NCBI RefSeq assembly: GCF_001194135.2
Contig: NC_069001.1
Span: 24,392,957-24,456,956, forward strand
Direction: 5' to 3'
DNA: 64,000 bases
Source: Octopus bimaculoides
Taxonomy: Eukaryota
A program made the translations under genes and the position numbers. Positions within the stretch are counted from its first letter, which is position 1, and every line of letters begins with the position of its first letter. This document shows positions 38,440 through 64,000 of the stretch, one piece after another. Below the pieces are notes generated by a model that had not been told where the DNA came from, did not search any database, and saw only the letters and a list, made by a program, of their open reading frames with translations.

Positions 38440-39397
38440 ATTGTGAGCACATTGGCTGAAATGCTTAGAGGCATTTCATTCATATTCATGTTTTGAGTTT
38501 AAATATCACCGAGATGAACTTTGCCCTTCATCCATTTGGAATTGACAAAGGAAGTACCAGTTGAGCACTGGGGGGTTGATGTAATTAATGTTCTCCCTGC
38601 CCCCCAAAAAACTTGCTGGCCTTGTGCCAAAATTTGAAGCCAATATTTGCTTACATGCTTATGTTCTGTTTCCAGTTTCTGTTCAGATCAAATTTATATT
38701 TCATTCTTCAGCATTTCAATAAACTAAAGTACTAATTGAAATTCTGGTCACTTTTTGATAAAATTGATGTAGAATATCTTGGACATTTACTGAGTGTGTC
38801 CATTATTTTACTGAAGATATTTGTTAGGAGTATTATTTGAGAGTGATTTGTTCTTCTATTTCTAACAAACCAATTAACCACCAAGAAGTCCTTTATTTCT
38901 CGCTCCAGTGTCACATTAAAAGCTCCCAGCATATACTGTGAAGTGGTTGGCATTAGGAAGGGCATCCAGCCGTTGGGACCAAGCTAAATCAGACTGGAAC
39001 CTGGTGCACCCCCTCCAGCCTGCCAGCCCTGGTCAAACCGTCCAACCCATACCAGCATGGAAAATGGCTATTAAAGGATGATGATGATGATGATGAAGGC
39101 TCAAGGAATTTGACCTTAATAAAACCCCTACAAATTACATCAGTCTCTCTCTCTTTTTACTCTTTCATTTGTTTCAGTCATTTGACTGCAGCCATACTGG
39201 AGCATCACCTTTAGTCAAGCAAATCGACCCCAGGAGACTTATTCTTTGTAAGCCTAGTACTTATTCTATTGGTCTCTTTTTGCCGAACTGCTAAGTTACA
39301 GAGGCATAAACACACCAGCATCAGTTGTCAAGCGATGGTGGTGGTGGTGGTGGGGAACAAACACAGACACACACGCATACACACACACACACACACG

Positions 39398-40866: not shown

Positions 40867-41004
40867 GATGGTGATGGTGGTGGCAGGGGCAGAGTTGGTA
40901 ATGGTAGTTGTAGTAATTGTACCAGCAGCAGCAGCATCAGTAGTAGTAGTGGTGGTGGTGGTGGTGGTAGTAGAAATGACTGTATTCTTAACGTTGGTTT
41001 AACA

Positions 41005-41470
41005 TTGGTTTCAAATTTCGGCACAAGGCCAGCAATTTTCGGTGGGAGAGGGTAGGTTGAGGATATCGACCCCAGTGCTCAACTGGTACTTATTTTATCA
41101 AACCCGAACGGATAAATGAAAGGCAAAGTTGACCTTGGCAAAATTTGAATTCAGAACGCAATGGCACTAGCGTAGCTGGGATNNNNNNNNNNNNNNNNNN
41201 NNNNNNNNNNNNNNNNNNNNNNNNNNNNNNNNNNNNNNNNNNNNNNNNNNNNNNNNNNNNNNNNNNNNNNNNNNNNNNNNNNNNNNNNNNNNNNNNNNNN
41301 NNNNNNNNNNNNNNNNNNNNNNGTAGGAGTGGTACTTTTTGGTCTGCTGTAGGTAATATGTGTTTTTTGTGGGGTCCAAGGCAGCAGATGGAAGGGCCGC
41401 CCCAGGCAGCATACACTCTAGCCACGCTGGTGCGTAATGGCAATTAAAATGCTGTTAAGCACTTTGCCCA
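41005..41470 (-). mobile_element. Meta-like SINE interrupted by a hAT MITE
   Basis: SINE core at 41005-41160; its head resumes after 41440. Confidence 0.7.
41165..41432. mobile_element. hAT-type MITE (interior partly in a gap)
   Basis: TIRs cactagcgtagct and agccacgctggtg; 8-bp TSD cgcaatgg (41157-41164) and cgtaatgg (41433-41440). Confidence 0.7.
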
Positions 41471-41679
41471 GTAAAAAAACGATGCTGCTGCCCTAATTGA
41501 TGGTTTACTATTGAGGATGGTGGTAGTGGTAGGGGGTTGATGCTAGTCAATTTGATTGTGGTAGTGGTAGTGGTGGTAGTGTCAGAGATTCTGCTTGATG
41601 TATCTGACTCATCTGTCTTTTATTTTTTCTCGTTGATGCAATGTGTCTAAAACTACCTTGGTCATGGAATGTCCTAAGT

Positions 41680-42135
41680 ACCATTGTATCACCATTTCAT
41701 CTGTTTTTATGTTCTGAGTTCAAATTTCAACAAAGCGGGCCTCACCCTTCATCCTTTCAGAATTGATAAGATAAGTACCAGTGATGCACTGGGGTCAATG
41801 TAATCAACTGACATCCTCTCCTGATCTTGTTGGCTTTCAATGAGCTGACAGAACCCTTAGCATGCTGGGTAAAATGGTTTCAAATTTTAGCCTTGAAATC
41901 AATATTAGAAATAAAGTTGAGGTGTTGAGGTGGCAGAATGGTTAGCATGTTGGGCAAAATGCGGAGTGGCATTTCATCTGTGTTTTGAGTTCAAATTTCA
42001 CCAAGGCTGACTTTACTTTTCATTGTTTCAGGGTCGATAAAATAAGTACCAGCTGGATAGAGGGGTTGATGTAATTGACTCATTTCCTCCTCAGAAATTG
42101 CTGGCTTTGTGCTAAAATCCAAAACCAATATTAGA
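41680..42135 (+). mobile_element. Meta-like SINE copies
   Basis: Two cores (41700-41830 and 41925-42135). Confidence 0.7.
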
Positions 42136-46838: not shown

Positions 46839-47910
46839 AAAGTGCTTACCAGCATTTCATTCATTTTTATGTTCTGAGCTCAAATTCTGCCAAGTTTGAC
46901 TTAGCTTTTCAAAGTGCTTACCAACATTTCATTCATTTTTATGTTCTGAGCTCAAATTCTGCCAAGTTTGACTTAGCTTTTCAAAGTGCTTACCAACATT
47001 TCATTCATTTTTATGTTCTNNNNNNNNNNNNNNNNNNNNNNNNNNNNNNNNNNNNNNNNNNNNNNNNNNNNNNNNNNNNNNNNNNNNNNNNNNNNNNNNN
47101 NNNNNNNNNNNNNNNNNNNNNNNNNNNNNNNNNNNNNNNNNNNNNNNNNNNNNNNNNNNNNNNNNNNNNNNNNNNNNNNNNNNNNNNNNNNNNNNNNNNN
47201 NNNNNNNNNNNNNNNNNNNNNNNNNNNNNNNNNNNNNNNNNNNNNNNNNNNNNNNNNNNNNNNNNNNNNNNNNNNNNNNNNNNNNNNNNNNNNNNNNNNN
47301 NNNNNNNNNNNNNNNNNNNNNNNNNNNNNNNNNNNNNNNNNNNNNNNNNNNNNNNNNNNNNNNNNNNNNNNNNNNNNNNNNNNNNNNNNNNNNNNNNNNN
47401 NNNNNNNNNNNNNNNNNNNNNNNNNNNNNNNNNNNNNNNNNNNNNNNNNNNNNNNNNNNNNNNNNNNNNNNNNNNNNNNNNNNNNNNNNNNNNNNNNNNN
47501 NNNNNNNNNNNNNNNNNNNNNNNNNNNNNNNNNNNNNNNNNNNNNNNNNNNNNNNNNNNNNNNNNNNNNNNNNNNNNNNNNNNNNNNNNNNNNNNNNNNN
47601 NNNNNNNNNNNNNNNNNNNNNNNNNNNNNNNNNNNNNNNNNNNNNNNNNNNNNNNNNNNNNNNNNNNNNNNNNNNNNNNNNNNNNNNNNNNNNNNNNNNN
47701 NNNNNNNNNNNNNNNNNNNNNNNNNATGTTCTGAGCTCAAATTCTGCCAAGTTTGACTTAGCTTTTCAAAGTGCTTACCAGCATTTCATTCATTTTTATG
47801 TTCTGAGCTCAAATTCTGCCAAGTTTGACTTAGCTTTTCAAAGTGCTTACCAGCATTTCATTCATTTTTATGTTCTGAGCTCAAATTCTGCCAAGTTTGA
47901 CTTAGCTTTT
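46839..47910 (+). repeat. 72-bp tandem array derived from a Meta-like SINE, spanning a gap
   Basis: Unit aaagtgcttaccagcatttc..ttctgagctcaaattctgccaagtttgacttagcttttc at 46839, 46911 and 46983, and again after the gap; the SINE head precedes it and the SINE tail follows (to ~48015). Confidence 0.9.
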
Positions 47911-48299
47911 CATCCTTTCAGGGGTCAATAAAATACATACCAGTTGAGCACAGGGATTAATGTAATTGACTTGCCCTTCCCCGAAATTTCTGGCTTTGTC
48001 CAAACTTTGAAATCAATACATGCAAGTAGTCTAAGTGTCCAGACTAAAAACCTCCTAATGTCCATTTTGATGTTAATTAATCTGGAATTGATAAAGCTTT
48101 GGTCAGACAAAGAAGCAGAACCTAGAAATATTTTGCAGAGCTCAGAAAGAAGTGATGGTGTGGAGCTAGAGGAAGCAGTTACTCCAGATCAAAGACCTAA
48201 TCTACTTGTTTGCAACAGTATATGTTATACTAAAAGACACCCTAATACTTGGCAGTGGTGTTAAACCTGACAACAGAGTAAATTCTGCCAGTCCAGCAC

Positions 48300-53392: not shown

Positions 53393-54635
53393 TCACTCTA
53401 GGCACAAGGCCTGAAGTTTTGGGGGAAGGGGACAGTCGATTAGATCAACTCCAGTATGCAACTGGTGCTGAATTTATCATACCCGAAAGATGGAAGGCAA
53501 AGTCGACCTCAGCAGAATTCGAACTCAGAATGTAAAGACAGACAAAATACCGCTAAGCATTTCTCCCGGCGTGCTAACGTTTCTGCCAGCTCACCGCCTT
53601 AAAATATTCTTTTCTATTCTAGGCACAAGGCCTGAAATTTTGAGGGAGCAGGCCAGTCGATTAGATCGACCCCAGTATGCAACTGGTACTTAATTTATCG
53701 ACCCCGAAAGGATGAAAGGCAAAGTCGACTTCACAGAATCAAATTAGCTATAACTACATTAATTAAGGTGACAAAGCTGGCAAAATTCTTAGTGGCATTT
53801 CGGCCGTCTTTATGTTCTAAGTTCAAATTCCGTCCAGGCCGACTTTGCCTTTCATCTTTCTGGGTCGATAAAATATGTACTAGTTGAGTGCTGAGGGTCG
53901 ATGTAATTGGCTCATCCCCACTCCCACCAAATTGCTGGCCTTGTGGCAAAATTTAAAACCAATATTATTATATTAATTAAGGCAGCGAGTTCGCAGAATC
54001 GTTAGCATGCTGAAAATACTCAGCGGTATTTCCACAGTCTTAACTTTCTGAGTTCAAATCCTTCCAGAGTCTACTTTGCATCTCATCTTTTTGGGATCAA
54101 TAAAATAAGTACCAGTTGTCTACTGGGGTCAATGTAATTGACATGACTCCACCCCTGAACTTGCTGGTCCTTTCATTAATTAAGGCAGCGAGCTGGCAGA
54201 AAAACTTTAGCACGCTGGACAAAAATGTTTAACGGCATTTCATCTGTCTTTACGTTCTGAGTTCAAATGTTACTAAAGTCAACTTTGTCTTTCGTCCTTG
54301 TGGGGTAAATACCAGTTGAGTACTAAGGGTCAATGTAACTGTCTTACCCACTCCTCTGAAATTGCTGGCTTTGCTCCAACATTTGAAACTAATATTATTA
54401 CATTAATTAGCCAATTAATCAAAGGCAGTGATCTGGTAGAATCATTAGCACATCTGACAAAATCCAAAGCAACATTTCTTCTGGGTTTACGTTCTGATTT
54501 CAAATACTACCGAGGTCAGCTTCGCCTTTCATTCCTTGTGAGGTCAATAAAACAAGTACCAGATGAACACTGGAGTTGATGTAATCGATTTGCACCAGCG
54601 CCTAAATTTGCTGACCTTGAATTAAAATTTGAGAC
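53393..54635. mobile_element. Cluster of six Meta-like SINEs (two on minus, four head-to-tail on plus)
   Basis: Minus copies at 53393-53601 and 53615-53735; plus copies start near 53762, 53977, 54179 and 54420. Confidence 0.85.
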
Positions 54636-55271
54636 TAATTCATTTAATAACCGATTAATTTAACGCAGGTATTGTCAGTTGGTGATGGAAAGATATATTT
54701 TAATATAAGATTATTTTCCTTAATCATCGAATTTTCAATATTCCCTACTGTATATATTAGGGGAGGCTACGACTATTCTCCAGATATTTCTTTTTAATGG
54801 AAGAAGCACAAATATCTCTCTTAGCATAAGTATGCAATTTAAAAATATTTCTTGCGGCGTAAAATCCTGAGCAATCATTGCATGCAAAACGGTGCACCAG
54901 GCATTTCCACAGGTACATACTCGAAGTGTTGGTGGTAGAGTGAGCCAGTTACCGAGTAGCGGACTAATACTTAGGCGAACCCAGGTGAAAAAAGTCCCAA
55001 GTAAAAAATGTCGCTGGGAAAAAGTCACGGAAAAGAAGTTCATCCAATGCGATGTGATCAACAAAAAGGAAAAAAAAAAGTCAGAATCCAACTCAGAGAC
55101 ACAGTGTCATTAAGATGTCTTATGCTGTTAGTAATACACCTGTTTCTGGAATATGGCAAAAACTGACTTTATCATGAGAACTCAGTATGAGATTGTAACT
55201 TTCTCATTTAGAGGATAAGGTTCCAAGGATTACAAGTTTAAAGAGCAATGTGCTGTAGCTACTCTATAAAT

Positions 55272-55960
55272 ATTATAGCTAATTAACATAATAGGGTAAA
55301 AATTTGATATTAATTAATATCAATTTAATACCATGAAACTAGCACATTAAAAGAATCAGAATGTTCAGGAAAAATTTTTTGGAGATCCTAAAAGGATTAT
55401 AGTACTTGTGTATATAAAAGTGACCAGCAAGTGGTCTGGTAATATGCTAGAAAAAGATCACTTAAAAAATTCTCAAAGAAAGATTCAGCGGAGCAAAATC
55501 AGGCGGGCGAGACCAGTGAAAATTATAAATACCTCGGTTATCTGTAGACTATAGTTTCAAAATCAATGCTTCCAAATTAAAGTATCTATTTATCATCAGT
55601 ACAAATTGCCGATATTATTATAATCGAACAGAATCTCGTGCTAGTTGTCTCCGACCAGTGCAAACGTGCACGTGATTCTATCCATTATAAAGATTAAAAT
55701 TCAAAAGTCTTAGTTTTGGCGCACTCTACAGAAAATAATTTCTGATTTGAATTTACCAACTTTGAGAAATGTGATTATGGTTAATTAACATAATGGGGTA
55801 AGAATTCGATATTAATTAATATCAATTTAATACAAGGAAACTAGCACATTAAAAGAATCAGAAGGTTCAGGAAAAAAATTTTGGAGATCCTAAAAGGATT
55901 ATAGTACTTGTGTATATAAAAGTGACCTACTGGTCACTTTTATATACACAAGTACTATAA
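55272..55960 (-). mobile_element. Terminally redundant hammerhead-containing unit (502-bp period) with terminal fold-back
   Basis: About 154-bp direct repeats at 55272-55425 and 55774-55927, with a hammerhead between them and a 29-bp perfect hairpin at 55899-55960. Confidence 0.65.
55542..55604 (-). ncRNA. Type I hammerhead ribozyme
   Basis: Minus strand uugua-CUGAUGA-[34-nt helix II, 11 of 14 positions paired]-GAAA-cuauag-UC-uacag. Helix III is the palindrome ACUAUAGU; GUC cleavage between 55547 and 55546. Confidence 0.85.
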
Positions 55961-56839
55961 ATATTATATCTAGTAGATCCGTTACACGTCACACAAGAGG
56001 GAGTCACGATTATAGTTTATGTATACAATCATCTAAAAAAGTGCTGTTTACTGTGATTATCAGAGGTCCACACACACACACACACATTGCAAATTTTTCA
56101 CTTTCATTGTGAGCACCTATTTATATGTATATCTATCTATCTGTCTGTTTGTCTGTCTGTCTGTCTGTATGTATGTATGTAAGCACGCATGTGTAAATGT
56201 ATACGCATACCCTTGCATAAAATGCATGCGTGTGTGTGTGTGCATGCATCATTCTACGGTTAGTTTGTAATATTCCTAAGGTCAACATTGACTCTTTCGT
56301 GACAGTTACATTCTTTAAACAATTCAACTCTTAACCAAATTAAATGTGGTTAAGTTCATTGAAAAGGATCAATGCTTCACTGTATTTTGATAAGTACTGG
56401 TAGAAAGTTGGTTGGGTAAACAGAGGATAATGATGAAATATGTGATAGATAGAAATTTTTAGCAGTGCAGTTTAATCATTTTTTTTATTAAGTTTACCTA
56501 AATTGCACTTAAGTAAATATCTTCAATGCAGAAAACTATTTTTGTAAATCGGGTTAAGATCAATGTAGAAGACAAAACTTATGAATTAAAAAGTGATCTG
56601 ATTTAAATAAGAGGAAGGTCTTAATTCATTTACAATCATGTCTGTTAGCATAAAAATAACAAAGACATTCAGTATAATTATGTTTATTTTTAAAAGATCG
56701 TAATGGAGGAGACTATTTTAGCAAACTTAGTTAAAAATGGTGCAGTAGCAAATATATACGAGGCAAAAAACGATCAGATTGTTAAGGAAATAAAGTTTGT
56801 TAAATCATCCTGTTTCTATTGTTTTAGAAAAAATAAGTA

Positions 56840-57224
56840 TACTCTTTTATCTGTTTCACTCATTTCACTGTGGCCATGCTGGAGCACCGCCTTTGGTCGA
56901 GCAAATCGACCCCAGGACTTATTCTTTGTAAGCCTAGTACTTATTCTGTCGATCCCTTTTGCCGAACTGCTAAGTTACGGGGACGTAAACACACCAGCAT
57001 CGGTCATCAAGCAATGTTGGGGGAACAAACACAGACACACACATATATATATACATATATACGGCGGGCTTCTTTCAGTTTCCATCTACCAAATCCACTC
57101 ACAAGGCTTTGGTTGGCCCAAGTCTATAGTAGAAGACACTTTCCCAAGGTGCCATGCAGTGGGACTGAACCCGGAACCATGTGGTCGGTAAGCAAGCTAC
57201 TTACCACACAGCCACTCCTGCACC
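56840..57224 (-). mobile_element. Full-length, young family A tRNA SINE
   Basis: Complete head to tail with CpGs retained. Confidence 0.9.
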
Positions 57225-57809
57225 TAAGTTTTCGTAAAGGATCTAAATAAGAGGAACCTAATACTGACATCATCATCAAAACTGATGCAGTGGAAAAAAA
57301 GAAACTAATAGACAAAATGTGGCCAAATTGAGGGTGATTACAGAGAAATTTTGTCACTTGGAAAGTTTTGTAAGTAAACGTGCAAAAAAGTGGCGAAATA
57401 TTCCACTGGTTACAAATTTTGCCCAGTTTCAGTTTGGTCTTTCGTAGATTGTATGTATGATGTAGGTTTTTTTTGCTGGGTATTTTTGCTGAAGCTAAAT
57501 GTTTTCTGATTTTCCAATATTTTGAAAATATATATATTTAATATGAATAAATTGTATATATTTAATAAATTATATGTAGAAAACCCTTTTAAATGTAAGA
57601 TATCAGCCTTTAAGGTGCGACTTTTGAAGGAAAAAATAATGGTTTTAGATGTAAGTTTAGGTACAAAATATGTCTCATTCAAATTTAATGAAACTAAGAA
57701 GATTCTTTGAGAATAAGATCATTCTAAGATTTAGTGCATAGATTTATTAATTTAAGCTCATCAGATTGAACGTTTCACTTGTTTACGAAGCAACGTATTC
57801 CAACCTGAC

Positions 57810-61811: not shown

Positions 61812-63500
61812 GCACCGGCGTAGCTGTGTGGTAAGAAGTTTGCTTCCCAATTATATGGTTCTGGGTTCAGTCCCATGTGTGGTATCTTGGGCAAGTGTCT
61901 TCTACACTAGCCTCAGGCAACCCTTGTGAGTGAATTTGGTAGATGGAAATTGGAAGAATCCTATCAGGTGGTGCTATTAAGTTAGACATGGCCTGGACCA
62001 ATCTTTGGTCGAAACACATCTAAGTTTATCTAAGTTCTAAGTTTATCTAAGTTCTAAGTTTATTGCACAATGAGGTGGAAACTAGGACTTTATGCTTGTA
62101 ATGTCAACTCATTAATCAATCAACTATTTCTGCAAATCCCAAATTCAAACATGTCACTGTGGTATAGCTGGGTAATATTAAGATAGAAATGTAACATTGT
62201 CATAGCCTTGTGTGTTAAAAGTGCAGAAAAATAATTTCTAGTGTTTGTTTTCTTTTCCTATTTTGATTGACACATAAAATCCCCAAAACCTCCTTTCACC
62301 CCAAACATTACATATCTCTTCTCATGCGTATTTACGTACTGTAACACATAAACACACCTTAATGTATACCGTTTTTATTAAATCGACTTTTCCTAAAGCA
62401 GACCACCATAGGCCTCAATGGATGCCATTAATTATATTGAATTAGCTTCACTACATACTTTCTATTATTGTAAACATTAGGGTTTGATTTATATTTATTT
62501 CTCTTTTGAAATATTGAGGAAATTGCCTAATTGACAAATTGACGAAACTGTGATGCATGTATATACTCAAATCAGAACTTGATAAAAATTGAACAAAAAG
62601 AAGGAAAAATAGACTTTAATTTGAAATTAAAATCTGAACAAAAATACAATTCTTAAACATAAAAACAAATTCCAGTTTGATTGAAATCTAAATTTCAATT
62701 TCATAAGTAATTTTGATTTGATATTTTACATTTTCATTTCAATTATTTAATTTTTTATTTTCATTCAGAAAATTTGGAGCTGCTGCAATGCAAATTTGAA
62801 TTGAACAAAGATTTATTTTTTCGTAATATTTTGAATATAAGAGATTTTTATCAAATAATGCAGGGAAATAGAAATATAGTATGGCTTAGGTTGACTGGTA
62901 GGTAAGCTTAAGTAGATTAGCAAACAAGCTCAAGAAGAGAATCAAACCTGGCTCAAGAAAGTAATTAAAGCAGGATCAAGTAGATTAGAACTCAAAAATA
63001 GGGTGTCTAGAAAATTCTTCTGATTAGTCAGCAGCTTCCATTACTACACCCATAATCCATCTGTACCAGTGAAATATAGCAGTTTCTCCCAGAAATTACA
63101 GTTACATTACAAAATGTTCACATCTGTCATCAGGTTTAAGGATAAAATCTCTTAAATTCCCATTCAAAATCCAAATCATTCTTCTCCGTGAGATGTTAAT
63201 AGTAGAAGCTATTTGAAACATTGGACCTGCTTCATTGATTCTCCTCGACATCATCTCAGTTTCAAATTTTGTACCAATTGAAATCAAACAGAAATATTGG
63301 TTTCAAATTTTGGCACAAGGCCAGCAATTTCTAGAGAAAGAGTAAATCAATTACATCAACCTCAATATGCAACTGGTACTTATTTTATTGACTCCGAAAG
63401 GATGAAATGCAAAGTTGACCATGGAATTTGAACTCAGAACAGATGAAATGTTGCTAAGCCATTTGTCCCGCATGCTAACTATTCTGCTAGCACATTGCCT
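61812..63500. mobile_element. Family A head (61812-61960 plus) and Meta-like SINE (63295-63500 minus)
   Basis: Similarity to the other copies. Confidence 0.7.
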
Positions 63501-64000
63501 TAGAATCAAAAAGAATCCGAGAAAATGCAGTTTGGAATGAAGTGATTAATTATTCTTTACTTCATAATAATTAATCACAACGTATGTTTATCAAATCCTA
63601 TATTAAAATAAAAATAAGCTATGCTGTTAAGGTAGGATCACTCGGTCTGGATTCAATAAACGATATCTGAATAATGCTCTTTGGTAGGTCAGCACTTACT
63701 CTTCCAATACTTACAAATGGCAGCTTATGGTTTGGTACAAAAAAAATCAACATCCATTGAAAAGGACAGAACAACTTGAACCAGTGTTCTTGATGTAAAC
63801 CCTTACTAGTTTTTCTTTACACATCTTTACATGTTCAGCCTTTTGGGCCTTTTTTGTTTATGCGTTTGCAAAAAAGTCACAATTGCTCAAGTAGTGTCAA
63901 TGTGATGCTATACTGAAAAAATACACGCTTGTTTGTACACAAACTGAAAATTTTATACATATATATATATAAAATTATATATATATATATATATATATAT

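What the first reader, a model, noticed from the sequence alone, without database searches (positions are those of the whole stretch)
55272..55960. 502-bp unit with terminal redundancy and one hammerhead: footprint of a circular or tandem RNA template
Seen: 55272-55425 recurs at 55774-55927 (offset exactly 502, about 10 differences). One minus-strand hammerhead lies between the copies. The second copy ends in a fold-back. A 14-mer (ctataaatattata) occurs at both outer edges (55264-55277 and 55955-55968). Known: Penelope insertions are often partial tandems with inverted ends, and reverse transcription around a circular RNA gives more-than-unit-length inserts. Inference: a ~1.3-mer insertion of a ~502-nt self-cleaving, non-coding mobile RNA mobilised in trans.
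Basis: partly seen in the sequence, partly recalled or inferred. Interest (0 to 1): 0.88.

Follow-up and report, generated by a model that had tools for sequence, protein, structure and literature searches.

The report
Hammerhead-bearing short retroelement copy in octopus
This looks like one old, dead insertion of a roughly 500-base non-coding mobile element that carries a hammerhead self-cleaving RNA motif and was probably copied into an octopus genome by the enzymes of a Penelope-like retrotransposon; elements of this kind are already described in other animals.

Summary
There is a 154-nt direct repeat at offset 502 with 10 differences. A perfect 29-bp fold-back follows the second copy. An identical 14-mer flanks the whole block. 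A complete hammerhead core lies on the minus strand between the copies.

The layout reads best as one retrotransposition event. On the minus strand it runs: target-site duplication, short inverted piece, 5'-truncated copy, full 502-nt unit, target-site duplication. This is the published insertion architecture of Penelope-like elements, here applied to a short, AT-rich, ORF-less unit. That makes it a non-LTR retrozyme-like, non-autonomous Penelope-type element.

I found no second copy in the window or in 61 kb of Octopus vulgaris. No tool available here can search octopus genomes by DNA. Family status, ribozyme activity and the circular-template idea are therefore untested. A circular RNA, a multimeric RNA and a template jump between linear RNAs all predict the same single-locus structure.

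The locus has only one ribozyme, so it cannot release a unit-length RNA. Interest is modest.

The parts
55264..55277 (.). Left copy of the flanking duplication CTATAAATATTATA (17 of 18 match through 55281). It is a putative target-site duplication, and its last 6-10 nt overlap the start of repeat A as microhomology.
   Evidence: (D5)
55272..55425 (-). Repeat copy A. This is the 3'-terminal 154 nt of the full unit in the minus (hammerhead) sense. It holds an AT-rich stem-loop (55295-55332) close to the RNA 3' end.
55426..55773 (-). Single-copy 348-nt part of the unit. Together with A it forms the 502-nt unit (55272-55773). GC is 31%. There is no ORF longer than 48 aa and no tRNA-like part.
55535..55612 (-). 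Type I hammerhead motif. Helix I is 7 bp, then a 2x2 internal loop, then 3 bp. The core is CUGAUGA (55599-55593). Helix II is 34 nt and AU-rich (55592-55559), with either a U.U pair at its base or an extra U plus A10.1-U11.1. Then comes GAAA, followed by a 2-bp helix III with the palindromic loop UAUA. C17 is at 55547, and the predicted cleavage lies between 55547 and 55546.
55774..55927 (-). Repeat copy A'. In the minus sense it is an upstream, 5'-truncated second copy, equivalent to a pseudo-LTR. It differs from A at 10 positions, all within its first 105 nt.
55925..55960 (+). Inverted piece at the minus-sense 5' end. Its reverse complement matches unit positions 55397-55432 at 34 of 36 nt. 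Positions 55932-55960 pair perfectly with 55899-55927 (29 bp, loop TACT). It shares a 3-nt overlap (ACC) with A' and a 6-nt overlap (CTATAA) with the right flanking duplication.
   Evidence: (I1, I3)
55955..55968 (.). Right copy of the flanking duplication CTATAAATATTATA (17 of 18 match through 55972).
   Evidence: (D5)

Best explanation
The block 55278-55954 is one retrotransposed, now inert copy of a short non-coding element. The unit is 502 nt with 31% GC, and its sense strand is the minus strand. It carries a type I hammerhead motif. It is best described as a non-LTR retrozyme-like, non-autonomous Penelope-type element.

Inferred mechanism, step by step:
1. A staggered cut was made in the TA-rich target CTATAAATATTATA.
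2. The plus-strand 3' end annealed by 6-10 nt of microhomology to the 3' end of the element RNA and primed reverse transcription.
3. The enzyme copied one whole unit and then 154 nt more. The extra length came from a longer-than-unit or circular template, or from a jump onto a second RNA. This produced the terminal redundancy, which corresponds to a pseudo-LTR.
4. The 5' junction was closed by a short inverted cDNA. This piece was either primed from the other target strand at the CTATAA/TTATAG microhomology (twin-priming geometry) or made by snap-back at the unit's own small hairpin GACCA-GCAAG-TGGTC.
5. Gap repair produced the 14-18 nt duplication.

Shown directly: the repeat, the fold-back, the flanking duplication, the microhomologies, the intact hammerhead core and the absence of coding capacity.

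Inferred: the RNA intermediate, the enzyme (a Penelope-like reverse transcriptase and endonuclease acting in trans) and ribozyme activity.

With a single hammerhead, this locus cannot release a unit-length RNA.
For: - The composite is bounded by an exact 14-mer (17 of 18 nt) at both outer edges. The whole block therefore arrived as one piece (D5).
- In the minus sense the order is inverted piece, 5'-truncated copy, full unit. Craig et al. 2021 (PMC8557442) give this architecture for Penelope-like elements, together with TA-rich targets and non-autonomous derivatives that form pLTRs.
- The hammerhead core is complete, with a 7-bp helix I and a 2-bp helix III capped by a palindromic tetraloop. 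This is the metazoan type I design (PMC4209133). It is very unlikely to arise by chance.
- Three more hammerhead-like motifs occur in the same window. One of them has a homologue in O. vulgaris.
- A U.U pair at the base of helix II is also reported for the axolotl retrozyme ribozyme HHR_Amex2 (PMC7229834).
- Unit length, low GC, a duplication longer than 4 bp and the lack of ORF, PBS and PPT all fit non-LTR retrozymes.
- The window is octopus-lineage DNA, and Penelope-like elements are reported in O. vulgaris (PMC13282606).
- The insertion runs uninterrupted across the predicted cleavage site. The template was therefore not a linear, ribozyme-cleaved monomer.
Against: - Only one copy is known. 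There is none elsewhere in the 64-kb window and none in 61 kb of O. vulgaris, so a family is not demonstrated.
- No Penelope-like ORF, and no sequence shared with one, was found.
- No Rfam hammerhead model matches above noise.
- Helix II is AU-rich with internal mismatches and lacks G10.1-C11.1. The 78-nt motif folds no better than shuffled sequence (z = -0.10).
- In this copy the hammerhead lies outside the repeated segment, whereas in Penelope elements it sits in the pLTR.
- The inverted piece is internal to the unit rather than an inverted 3'-terminal copy.
- The two direct copies differ by 6.5%, while the last 49 nt and the fold-back arms are identical. By my arithmetic this uneven pattern has P of about 0.02. 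A single clean event followed by uniform decay does not explain it.
Confidence: 0.58

Rival explanations
1. This is a DNA-level local rearrangement. An older sequence that already held a decayed hammerhead, for example a Penelope pLTR remnant, underwent a replication-based partial duplication of 154 nt. A palindrome then formed by template switching at the small hairpin. The flanking 14-mer would be AT-rich microhomology or chance.
For: - The duplication is unique to this locus as far as could be searched.
- Microhomologies sit at every junction, as also expected from replication template switching.
- Identity is uneven: 10 differences in the first 105 nt and none in the last 49 nt or in the fold-back. 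This hints at more than one event.
Against: - The 14-18 nt direct repeat sits exactly at both outer edges of the whole composite (D5). A later internal duplication does not predict this.
- The combination of partial tandem, inverted piece and hammerhead is the specific published signature of Penelope-type insertion.
Confidence: 0.18
2. This is another class of element with an incidental or captured hammerhead-like motif. Candidates are a non-autonomous Helitron or Helentron (subterminal 3' hairpin, CTAG end) or a small LTR-type element (TRIM or plant-style LTR retrozyme) with A and A' as its LTRs.
For: - A long hairpin ends 9 nt before a CTAG followed by T at 55970-55974.
- A and A' are direct repeats flanking a 348-nt core.
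- Helitron expansions are reported in O. vulgaris.
Against: - Helitrons make no target duplication and insert between A and T. Here a 14-18 nt duplication flanks the block, and the base before the candidate 5' TC is C.
- On the LTR reading, the repeats lack TG...CA ends and there is no convincing PBS or PPT.
- The duplication is 14 nt rather than 4-6 nt.
- The ribozyme is type I and lies outside the repeats. An extra inverted piece also sits outside the right repeat.
Confidence: 0.07
3. This is an assembly artefact. The near-duplicate and the perfect palindrome would come from mis-joined reads or a chimeric fold-back read in a draft assembly.
For: - The window is a gap-rich draft, with 16 runs of N totalling 4002 bases.
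- Craig et al. note that such tandem and inverted structures trouble short-read assemblies.
- The fold-back is 100% perfect.
Against: - The two direct copies differ at 10 of 154 positions. Duplication artefacts are usually near-identical.
- The locus lies in a 16-kb gap-free stretch.
- The junctions carry orderly microhomologies and a flanking duplication.
Confidence: 0.07

Closest known systems
Metazoan non-LTR retrozymes (Cervera and de la Pena 2020, PMC7229834; Li, Clavereau and Pollet 2026 preprint, 10.64898/2026.07.22.740005)
   Same: - Short, non-coding, low-GC units carrying a type I hammerhead.
- The unit length of 502 nt lies within the reported 51-972 bp range.
- Flanking duplications are longer than 4 bp when present.
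- Monomer or near-monomer derivative copies are described.
- A proposed dependence on Penelope-like elements and movement through circular RNA.
   Different: - The defining arrangement is a tandem array with a hammerhead in every unit, from dimers to multimers. Here there are 1.31 units and one hammerhead.
- No family, no expression data and no circular RNA have been shown.
- Helix II is far longer and weaker than in the described ribozymes.
Penelope-like element insertion architecture (Craig, Yushenova, Rodriguez and Arkhipova 2021, PMC8557442)
   Same: - 5' truncation and a partial tandem that forms a pseudo-LTR.
- Inverted material at the 5' end.
- A TA-rich target.
- A hammerhead in sense orientation.
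- Non-autonomous derivatives that still form pLTRs are known, for example MRC1 among Chlamys elements.
   Different: - There is no RT or GIY-YIG ORF, and no known autonomous partner.
- In this copy the hammerhead lies outside the repeated part.
- The inverted piece is a 29-36 nt internal fold-back, not an inverted 5'-truncated copy that reaches the 3' end.
Minimal or dimeric hammerheads of Penelope-like elements and other metazoan type I hammerheads (Cervera and de la Pena 2014, PMC4209133); axolotl HHR_Amex2 (PMC7229834)
   Same: - Complete conserved core.
- Helix III of 2 bp with a palindromic 4-nt loop. ACUAUAGU is an 8-nt palindrome that could extend helix III in a dimer.
[quoted passage not shown]
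- A larger than usual helix II.
- A U.U pair at the base of helix II, as in HHR_Amex2.
   Different: - The highly conserved G10.1-C11.1 pair is absent.
- Helix II is 34 nt with three internal mismatches, against 4-8 bp in the described families.
- Helix I is longer, at 7 bp.
- There is no alignment of relatives, so no covariation support.
Twin priming of LINE-1 5' inversions
   Same: - The inverted cDNA is attached to the opposite target strand.
- There is microhomology at the priming site (TTATAG) and at the inversion junction (ACC).
- A short overlap or duplication occurs at the junction.
- The flanking target duplication is intact.
   Different: - The inverted segment is only 29-36 nt and almost wholly overlaps the direct copy.
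- The element is not a LINE and has no poly(A) tail.
Plant LTR retrozymes (Cervera, Urbina and de la Pena 2016, PMC4918200)
   Same: Non-autonomous, non-coding, hammerhead-bearing elements thought to propagate through circular RNA.
   Different: Plant retrozymes have type III hammerheads inside true LTRs, a PBS, a PPT, 4-bp duplications and GC above 55%. None of these is found here.

Membership tests
Hammerhead ribozyme, type I (metazoan / Penelope type) | Conserved core C3-U4-G5-A6-N7-G8-A9 ... G12-A13-A14, the A15.1-U16.1 pair, and H17 at the cleavage site | tested here: met
   The motif reads CUGAUGA ... GAAAC-UAUA-GUC on the minus strand from 55599 to 55547.
Hammerhead ribozyme, type I (metazoan / Penelope type) | Three helices around the core, with helix I open-ended and helix III short with a palindromic loop | tested here: met
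   Helix I is 7 bp plus 3 bp. Helix II has about 11 pairs with 3 mismatches. Helix III is 2 bp with the loop UAUA. The design criteria come from PMC4209133.
Hammerhead ribozyme, type I (metazoan / Penelope type) | G10.1-C11.1 pair at the base of helix II | tested here: not met
   The base of helix II is U.U, or A-U if the first U is read as the extra nucleotide after A9. A U.U base is reported in the weakly active axolotl HHR_Amex2.
Hammerhead ribozyme, type I (metazoan / Penelope type) | Match to a curated covariance model | tested here: not met
   No hammerhead family passes at gathering threshold. The best match is RAGATH-1-hammerhead at 17.1 bits, E about 1, with a non-canonical alignment. 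As a control, the canonical motif at 12431 also scores only 17 bits.
Hammerhead ribozyme, type I (metazoan / Penelope type) | Self-cleavage activity; covariation among relatives | not testable with these tools
Metazoan non-LTR retrozyme | Tandem array of at least 2 units with a type I hammerhead in each unit | tested here: not met
   There are 1.31 units and one hammerhead. At best this is a monomer-type derivative copy in the sense.
Metazoan non-LTR retrozyme | Short non-coding unit with low GC and no LTR, PBS or PPT; a duplication longer than 4 bp when present | tested here: met
   The unit is 502 nt with 31% GC. ORFs are no longer than 48 aa. There is no tRNA-like part. The flanking repeat is 14-18 nt.
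Metazoan non-LTR retrozyme | Multicopy family in the genome; expressed as linear and circular RNA | not testable with these tools
   No octopus genome or transcriptome can be searched by DNA here. The protein-route negatives are uninformative, because an abundant SINE used as a positive control returned only 3 annotated proteins.
Penelope-like element (insertion architecture; non-autonomous derivative) | Partial tandem forming a pseudo-LTR, with 5' truncation | tested here: met
   A' (55774-55927) equals the last 154 nt of the unit and sits upstream of a full unit in the minus sense.
Penelope-like element (insertion architecture; non-autonomous derivative) | Inverted 5'-truncated copy at the 5' end and/or a 30-40 bp tail | tested here: inconclusive
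   A 29-36 nt inverted piece is present at the 5' end (I1 and I3). It matches an internal part of the unit, not its 3' end. Its length is close to that of the described tail.
Penelope-like element (insertion architecture; non-autonomous derivative) | Hammerhead located within the pLTR | tested here: not met
   The hammerhead lies in the single-copy part, 55426-55773. This depends on where the upstream copy was truncated, so it is a weak failure.
Penelope-like element (insertion architecture; non-autonomous derivative) | Sequence shared with an autonomous element that encodes RT and GIY-YIG | not testable with these tools
   The unit has no ORF longer than 48 aa and matches nothing else in the window. 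A survey of long open frames across the window by eye showed no obvious Penelope-like ORF, but only two window segments were scanned against Pfam, without hits. Octopus genomes are not searchable here.
Plant-type LTR retrozyme / TRIM | Type III hammerhead in each LTR, a PBS, a PPT, and 4-6 bp duplications | tested here: not met
   The hammerhead is type I and lies outside the repeats. There are no TG...CA ends and no PBS or PPT by inspection. The duplication is 14 nt.
Helitron / Helentron | 5' TC and 3' CTRR ends, a subterminal hairpin, insertion between A and T, and no target duplication | tested here: not met
   A hairpin and a downstream CTAG followed by T exist. However, a 14-18 nt duplication flanks the block, and the base before the candidate 5' TC is C.

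The most novel reading that the evidence does not exclude
The 1.31-unit copy would be a direct genomic footprint of reverse transcription running more than once around a circular, ribozyme-processed RNA. Synthesis would be primed on a nicked chromosome by a Penelope-type enzyme. That would be the first junction-level evidence for how animal retrozyme circles re-enter the genome. It predicts that family members start at circularly permuted positions.
Probability: 0.2. Interest if true: 0.6.

Novelty: new member of a known kind. Interest (0 to 1): 0.33.

Why it matters
How animal hammerhead-bearing repeats (non-LTR retrozymes) integrate is still inferred rather than shown. Their link to Penelope-like elements rests mainly on co-occurrence and on similarity to pLTRs.

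A short hammerhead element caught with intact flanking duplications, a partial tandem and an inverted 5' piece would tie the Penelope insertion signature to a retrozyme-sized RNA. A genome-wide survey of such junctions in octopus could show whether templates are circular, multimeric or linear.

As a single decayed copy, this locus is an anecdote. Its value is as a seed sequence for that survey.

Tried and rejected
- **Rfam.** I ran gathering threshold on the whole window, and E-value mode on the whole window and on narrow ranges. Hits at the fold-back were microRNA models, which simply reflect a perfect hairpin. Weak C/D snoRNA hits come from UGAUGA. I treat none of them as real.
- **Other copies in the window.** blastn with sensitive settings found none.
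- **Paralogous empty site.** The immediate flanks are unique in the window.
- **Relatives by the protein route.** I searched a 67-aa open frame and then all stop-free frames joined into one query. Both found nothing. A SINE positive control returned only three annotated O. vulgaris proteins, so these negatives carry no weight.
- **Exact-protein look-ups.** Four window ORFs are not on record.
- **DNA pattern scans.** A unit 22-mer in metagenomes gave 0 hits. The hammerhead with helix I in viral contigs gave 0 hits. A looser hammerhead pattern in metagenomes gave 120 loci. Most are a 57-nt repeat from plant-associated metagenomes with no helix I pairing, or scattered chance matches, and none resembles the unit.
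- **O. vulgaris sample.** The three loci total 61 kb and hold no copy of the unit.
- **tRNA-like or SINE head.** None found.
- **Alternative classes.** LTR-type and Helitron readings were rejected on their end features.
- **Circular folding script.** My own script with controls timed out. Linear folds replaced it: z = -2.67 for the minus strand and -1.89 for the plus strand. This is modest and not diagnostic.
- **Pfam on two window ORF remnants.** By eye they looked like mariner and LINE remnants, but Pfam gave no hits.

Full report
**1. Observation**

- **Direct repeat.** Positions 55272-55425 recur at 55774-55927. The repeat is 154 nt, ungapped, at offset 502, with 10 differences (5 transitions, 5 transversions). 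The JC distance is 0.068 and blastn gives E = 2e-51.
- **Fold-back.** The second copy runs into a perfect 29-bp fold-back, 55899-55927 paired with 55932-55960, with the loop TACT.
- **Flanking 14-mer.** CTATAAATATTATA sits at 55264-55277 and 55955-55968 and extends to 17 of 18 nt (D5). Given the window's composition, I estimate the chance of this at both edges at about 1e-5.
- **Hammerhead.** Between the copies the minus strand reads, from 55612 to 55535: CGG-CA-AUUUGUA / CUGAUGA / 34-nt AU-rich hairpin / GAAA / C-UAUA-G / UC, then UACAGAU-AA-CCG. All conserved hammerhead core positions are present. Helix I has 7 pairs, then an internal loop, then 3 more pairs. Helix III has 2 pairs with a palindromic tetraloop. 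The predicted cleavage lies between 55547 and 55546.

The core pattern occurs twice in the window against 0.03 expected. Motifs that also have helix I occur four times against 0.10 expected in 300 Markov-1 simulations.

Rfam does not recognise the motif. It also gives only 17 bits to the textbook-looking motif at 12431-12465, so that negative means little. The locus lies in a 16-kb stretch without assembly gaps.

**2. Context**

The window is repeat-rich, 34.6% GC, draft-quality animal DNA. Its commonest repeat is about 400 bp long. That repeat is 82-88% identical to copies on Octopus vulgaris chromosomes, and its translation matches only O. vulgaris proteins. The octopus assignment therefore holds at lineage level. 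Penelope-like elements are an established component of O. vulgaris repeats (PMC13282606).

**3. Anatomy read on the hammerhead strand**

On the minus strand the order is:
- flanking duplication;
- a 29-36 nt inverted piece;
- a 5'-truncated copy consisting of the last 154 nt of the unit;
- one full 502-nt unit, with the hammerhead 175-227 nt from its start;
- flanking duplication.

Craig et al. 2021 describe Penelope-like insertions as 5'-truncated and often in partial tandem, so that a truncated copy precedes a full one and forms a pseudo-LTR. They often carry inverted material at the 5' end and a 30-40 bp tail, and some clades prefer TA-rich targets. The authors also report non-autonomous derivatives that still form pLTRs.

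The unit here has 31% GC, no ORF above 48 aa and no tRNA-like part. It cannot be autonomous.

Every junction carries microhomology:
- The left duplication overlaps the start of repeat A by 6-10 nt (ATTATAGCTA against ATTATGGTTA in A').
- The right duplication overlaps the end of the inverted piece by 6 nt (CTATAA).
- The inverted piece overlaps A' by 3 nt (ACC).

The reverse complement of 55925-55960 matches unit positions 55397-55432 at 34 of 36 nt. That is 7 nt beyond the point where A' stops. This slightly favours an independently primed inverted cDNA (twin-priming geometry) over a simple snap-back copy of A'. Both models use the unit's own small hairpin, GACCA-GCAAG-TGGTC, at 55422-55436.

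**4. Mechanism**

The most economical reading is a single target-primed reverse transcription event on an RNA of minus-strand sense. The enzyme would be supplied in trans, most plausibly by a Penelope-like element.

The insertion crosses the predicted cleavage site without interruption. The template was therefore not a linear, ribozyme-cleaved monomer.

Three templates remain possible: a circle, an uncleaved multimer, or two linear RNAs joined by a template jump. All three give exactly the same 1.31-mer, so one locus cannot separate them.

**5. What could not be done**

No tool here searches octopus genomes by DNA. I tried several routes:
- the window itself;
- translated frames against the protein collection;
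- exact-ORF look-ups;
- DNA patterns in metagenomes and viral contigs;
- the three O. vulgaris loci reachable through SINE-derived proteins.

None yielded a second copy.

The protein negatives are uninformative. A very abundant SINE, used as a positive control, returned only three annotated proteins.

Family status, an autonomous partner, an empty orthologous site, ribozyme activity and RNA circles all remain open.

**6. Weak points of the preferred reading**

- Helix II lacks the usual G10.1-C11.1 pair and has three internal mismatches. The motif is no more stable than shuffled sequence (z = -0.10). A U.U base and weak activity are known for an axolotl retrozyme ribozyme, and another long-helix-II motif in this window has an O. 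vulgaris homologue with a U-A to A-U double change. Activity here is still only a conjecture.
- The hammerhead lies outside the repeated segment.
- The inverted piece is internal rather than 3'-terminal.
- The 10 differences between A and A' all fall in the first 105 nt. The last 49 nt and the fold-back arms are identical (P about 0.02 by my arithmetic). This hints at two templates, later conversion, or a second event.

**7. Rivals**

- A replication-based local duplication plus palindrome in an old hammerhead-bearing remnant (0.18) fits the uniqueness and the microhomologies. It does not predict the duplication that flanks the whole block.
- Helitron-like or LTR-like readings (0.07) fail on their end features.
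- An assembly artefact (0.07) is unlikely given 6.5% divergence between the copies and the gap-free context.

**8. Comparison with what is known, and novelty**

Functionally and structurally this matches the published class of animal non-LTR retrozymes. These are type I hammerheads in short, low-GC, non-coding units of 51-972 bp that occur as monomers, dimers and multimers, are related to Penelope pLTRs, and are thought to move through circular RNA.

Strict membership is not met, because the defining tandem array with a ribozyme in each unit is absent. At most this is a monomer-type derivative.

I rate it a new member of a known kind, of modest interest (0.33). Its use is as a seed for a genome-wide junction survey. 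That survey could test the circular-template idea, to which I give about 0.2.

Noticed in passing
window 12424-12478 (+): A very canonical Penelope-type hammerhead: GAGGC / CUGAUGA / AUGCC-AAUA-GGCAU / GAAA / GUACGUAC-U-C / GCCUU. Its helix III is a 10-nt palindrome. It lies about 5 nt before an AT-rich repeat, so it may mark the 3' end of a truncated element. Rfam HH9 gives only 17 bits (E = 0.05).
   Followed up: partly
window 36226-36268 (+): A hammerhead-like motif with a perfect 6-bp helix I (UUCAGG/CCUGAA), CUGAUGA, a short helix II (GAG/CUC) and GAAAC-AU-GUC. A GC-richer 200-nt stretch follows it. There is no other copy in the window.
   Followed up: partly
window 5399-5477 (-) and L123 9086-9161 (+): A hammerhead-like motif with a CUGAAGA core and a helix II insert of about 57 nt. 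It has a homologous copy in O. vulgaris (chromosome record OX597820.1). The two copies show a U-A to A-U double change in helix II. This suggests that a family of long-helix-II hammerheads exists in octopuses.
   Followed up: partly
window 4881-5287, 6786-7162, 21076-21507, 39135-39393, 56840-57226 and others: An abundant SINE-like repeat of about 400 bp, 82-88% identical to copies in O. vulgaris GCA_951406725.2. Its translation (…LLSVSIYQIHSQGFG…PRCHAVGLNPEPCG…) matches three 'hypothetical predicted proteins' of O. vulgaris, which look like annotated repeat ORFs.
   Followed up: partly
window 54306-54668, with copies at 53405-54428, 63293-63504, 47839-48021, 41000-42133, 38369-38644, 22627-22777, 4378-4603: A second dispersed repeat family, with hits of about 90-320 bp at 63-79% identity. 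Several adjacent copies lie just upstream of the studied locus. It has not been classified.
   Followed up: no
window 46839-47019 and 47726-47912: A near-perfect 72-bp tandem repeat (99-100% matches) lies on both sides of a 706-N assembly gap. It is probably one longer array that the assembler collapsed or could not resolve.
   Followed up: no
window 27168-27516, 14109-14277, 7720-7959: Further minisatellite-type arrays: 117 bp x 3.0 copies, 29 bp x 5.8 copies (97% matches), and 131 bp x 1.8 copies.
   Followed up: no
window 3870-4148 (+) and 285-626 (+): By eye, these open frames resemble a mariner-type transposase C-terminus (…LLLYDNACPH…SPGLTSSDYHIFGLLK…) and a LINE ORF2 C-terminal zinc-binding region. 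Pfam gave no hit at E <= 0.01 for either, so both calls are unverified.
   Followed up: partly
L001-L120 (metagenome contigs), e.g. L052 4538-4594: A 57-nt sequence, CTGATGATATTTTACCTGATTTTGTTGCACGCTCAAAAAACCATGGAAACTATAGTC, recurs in dozens of contigs from a few JGI metagenome projects (Ga03075xx, Ga03254xx). It has no helix I pairing. It is probably a host or eukaryotic repeat, not a ribozyme, and is unrelated to the finding.
   Followed up: no
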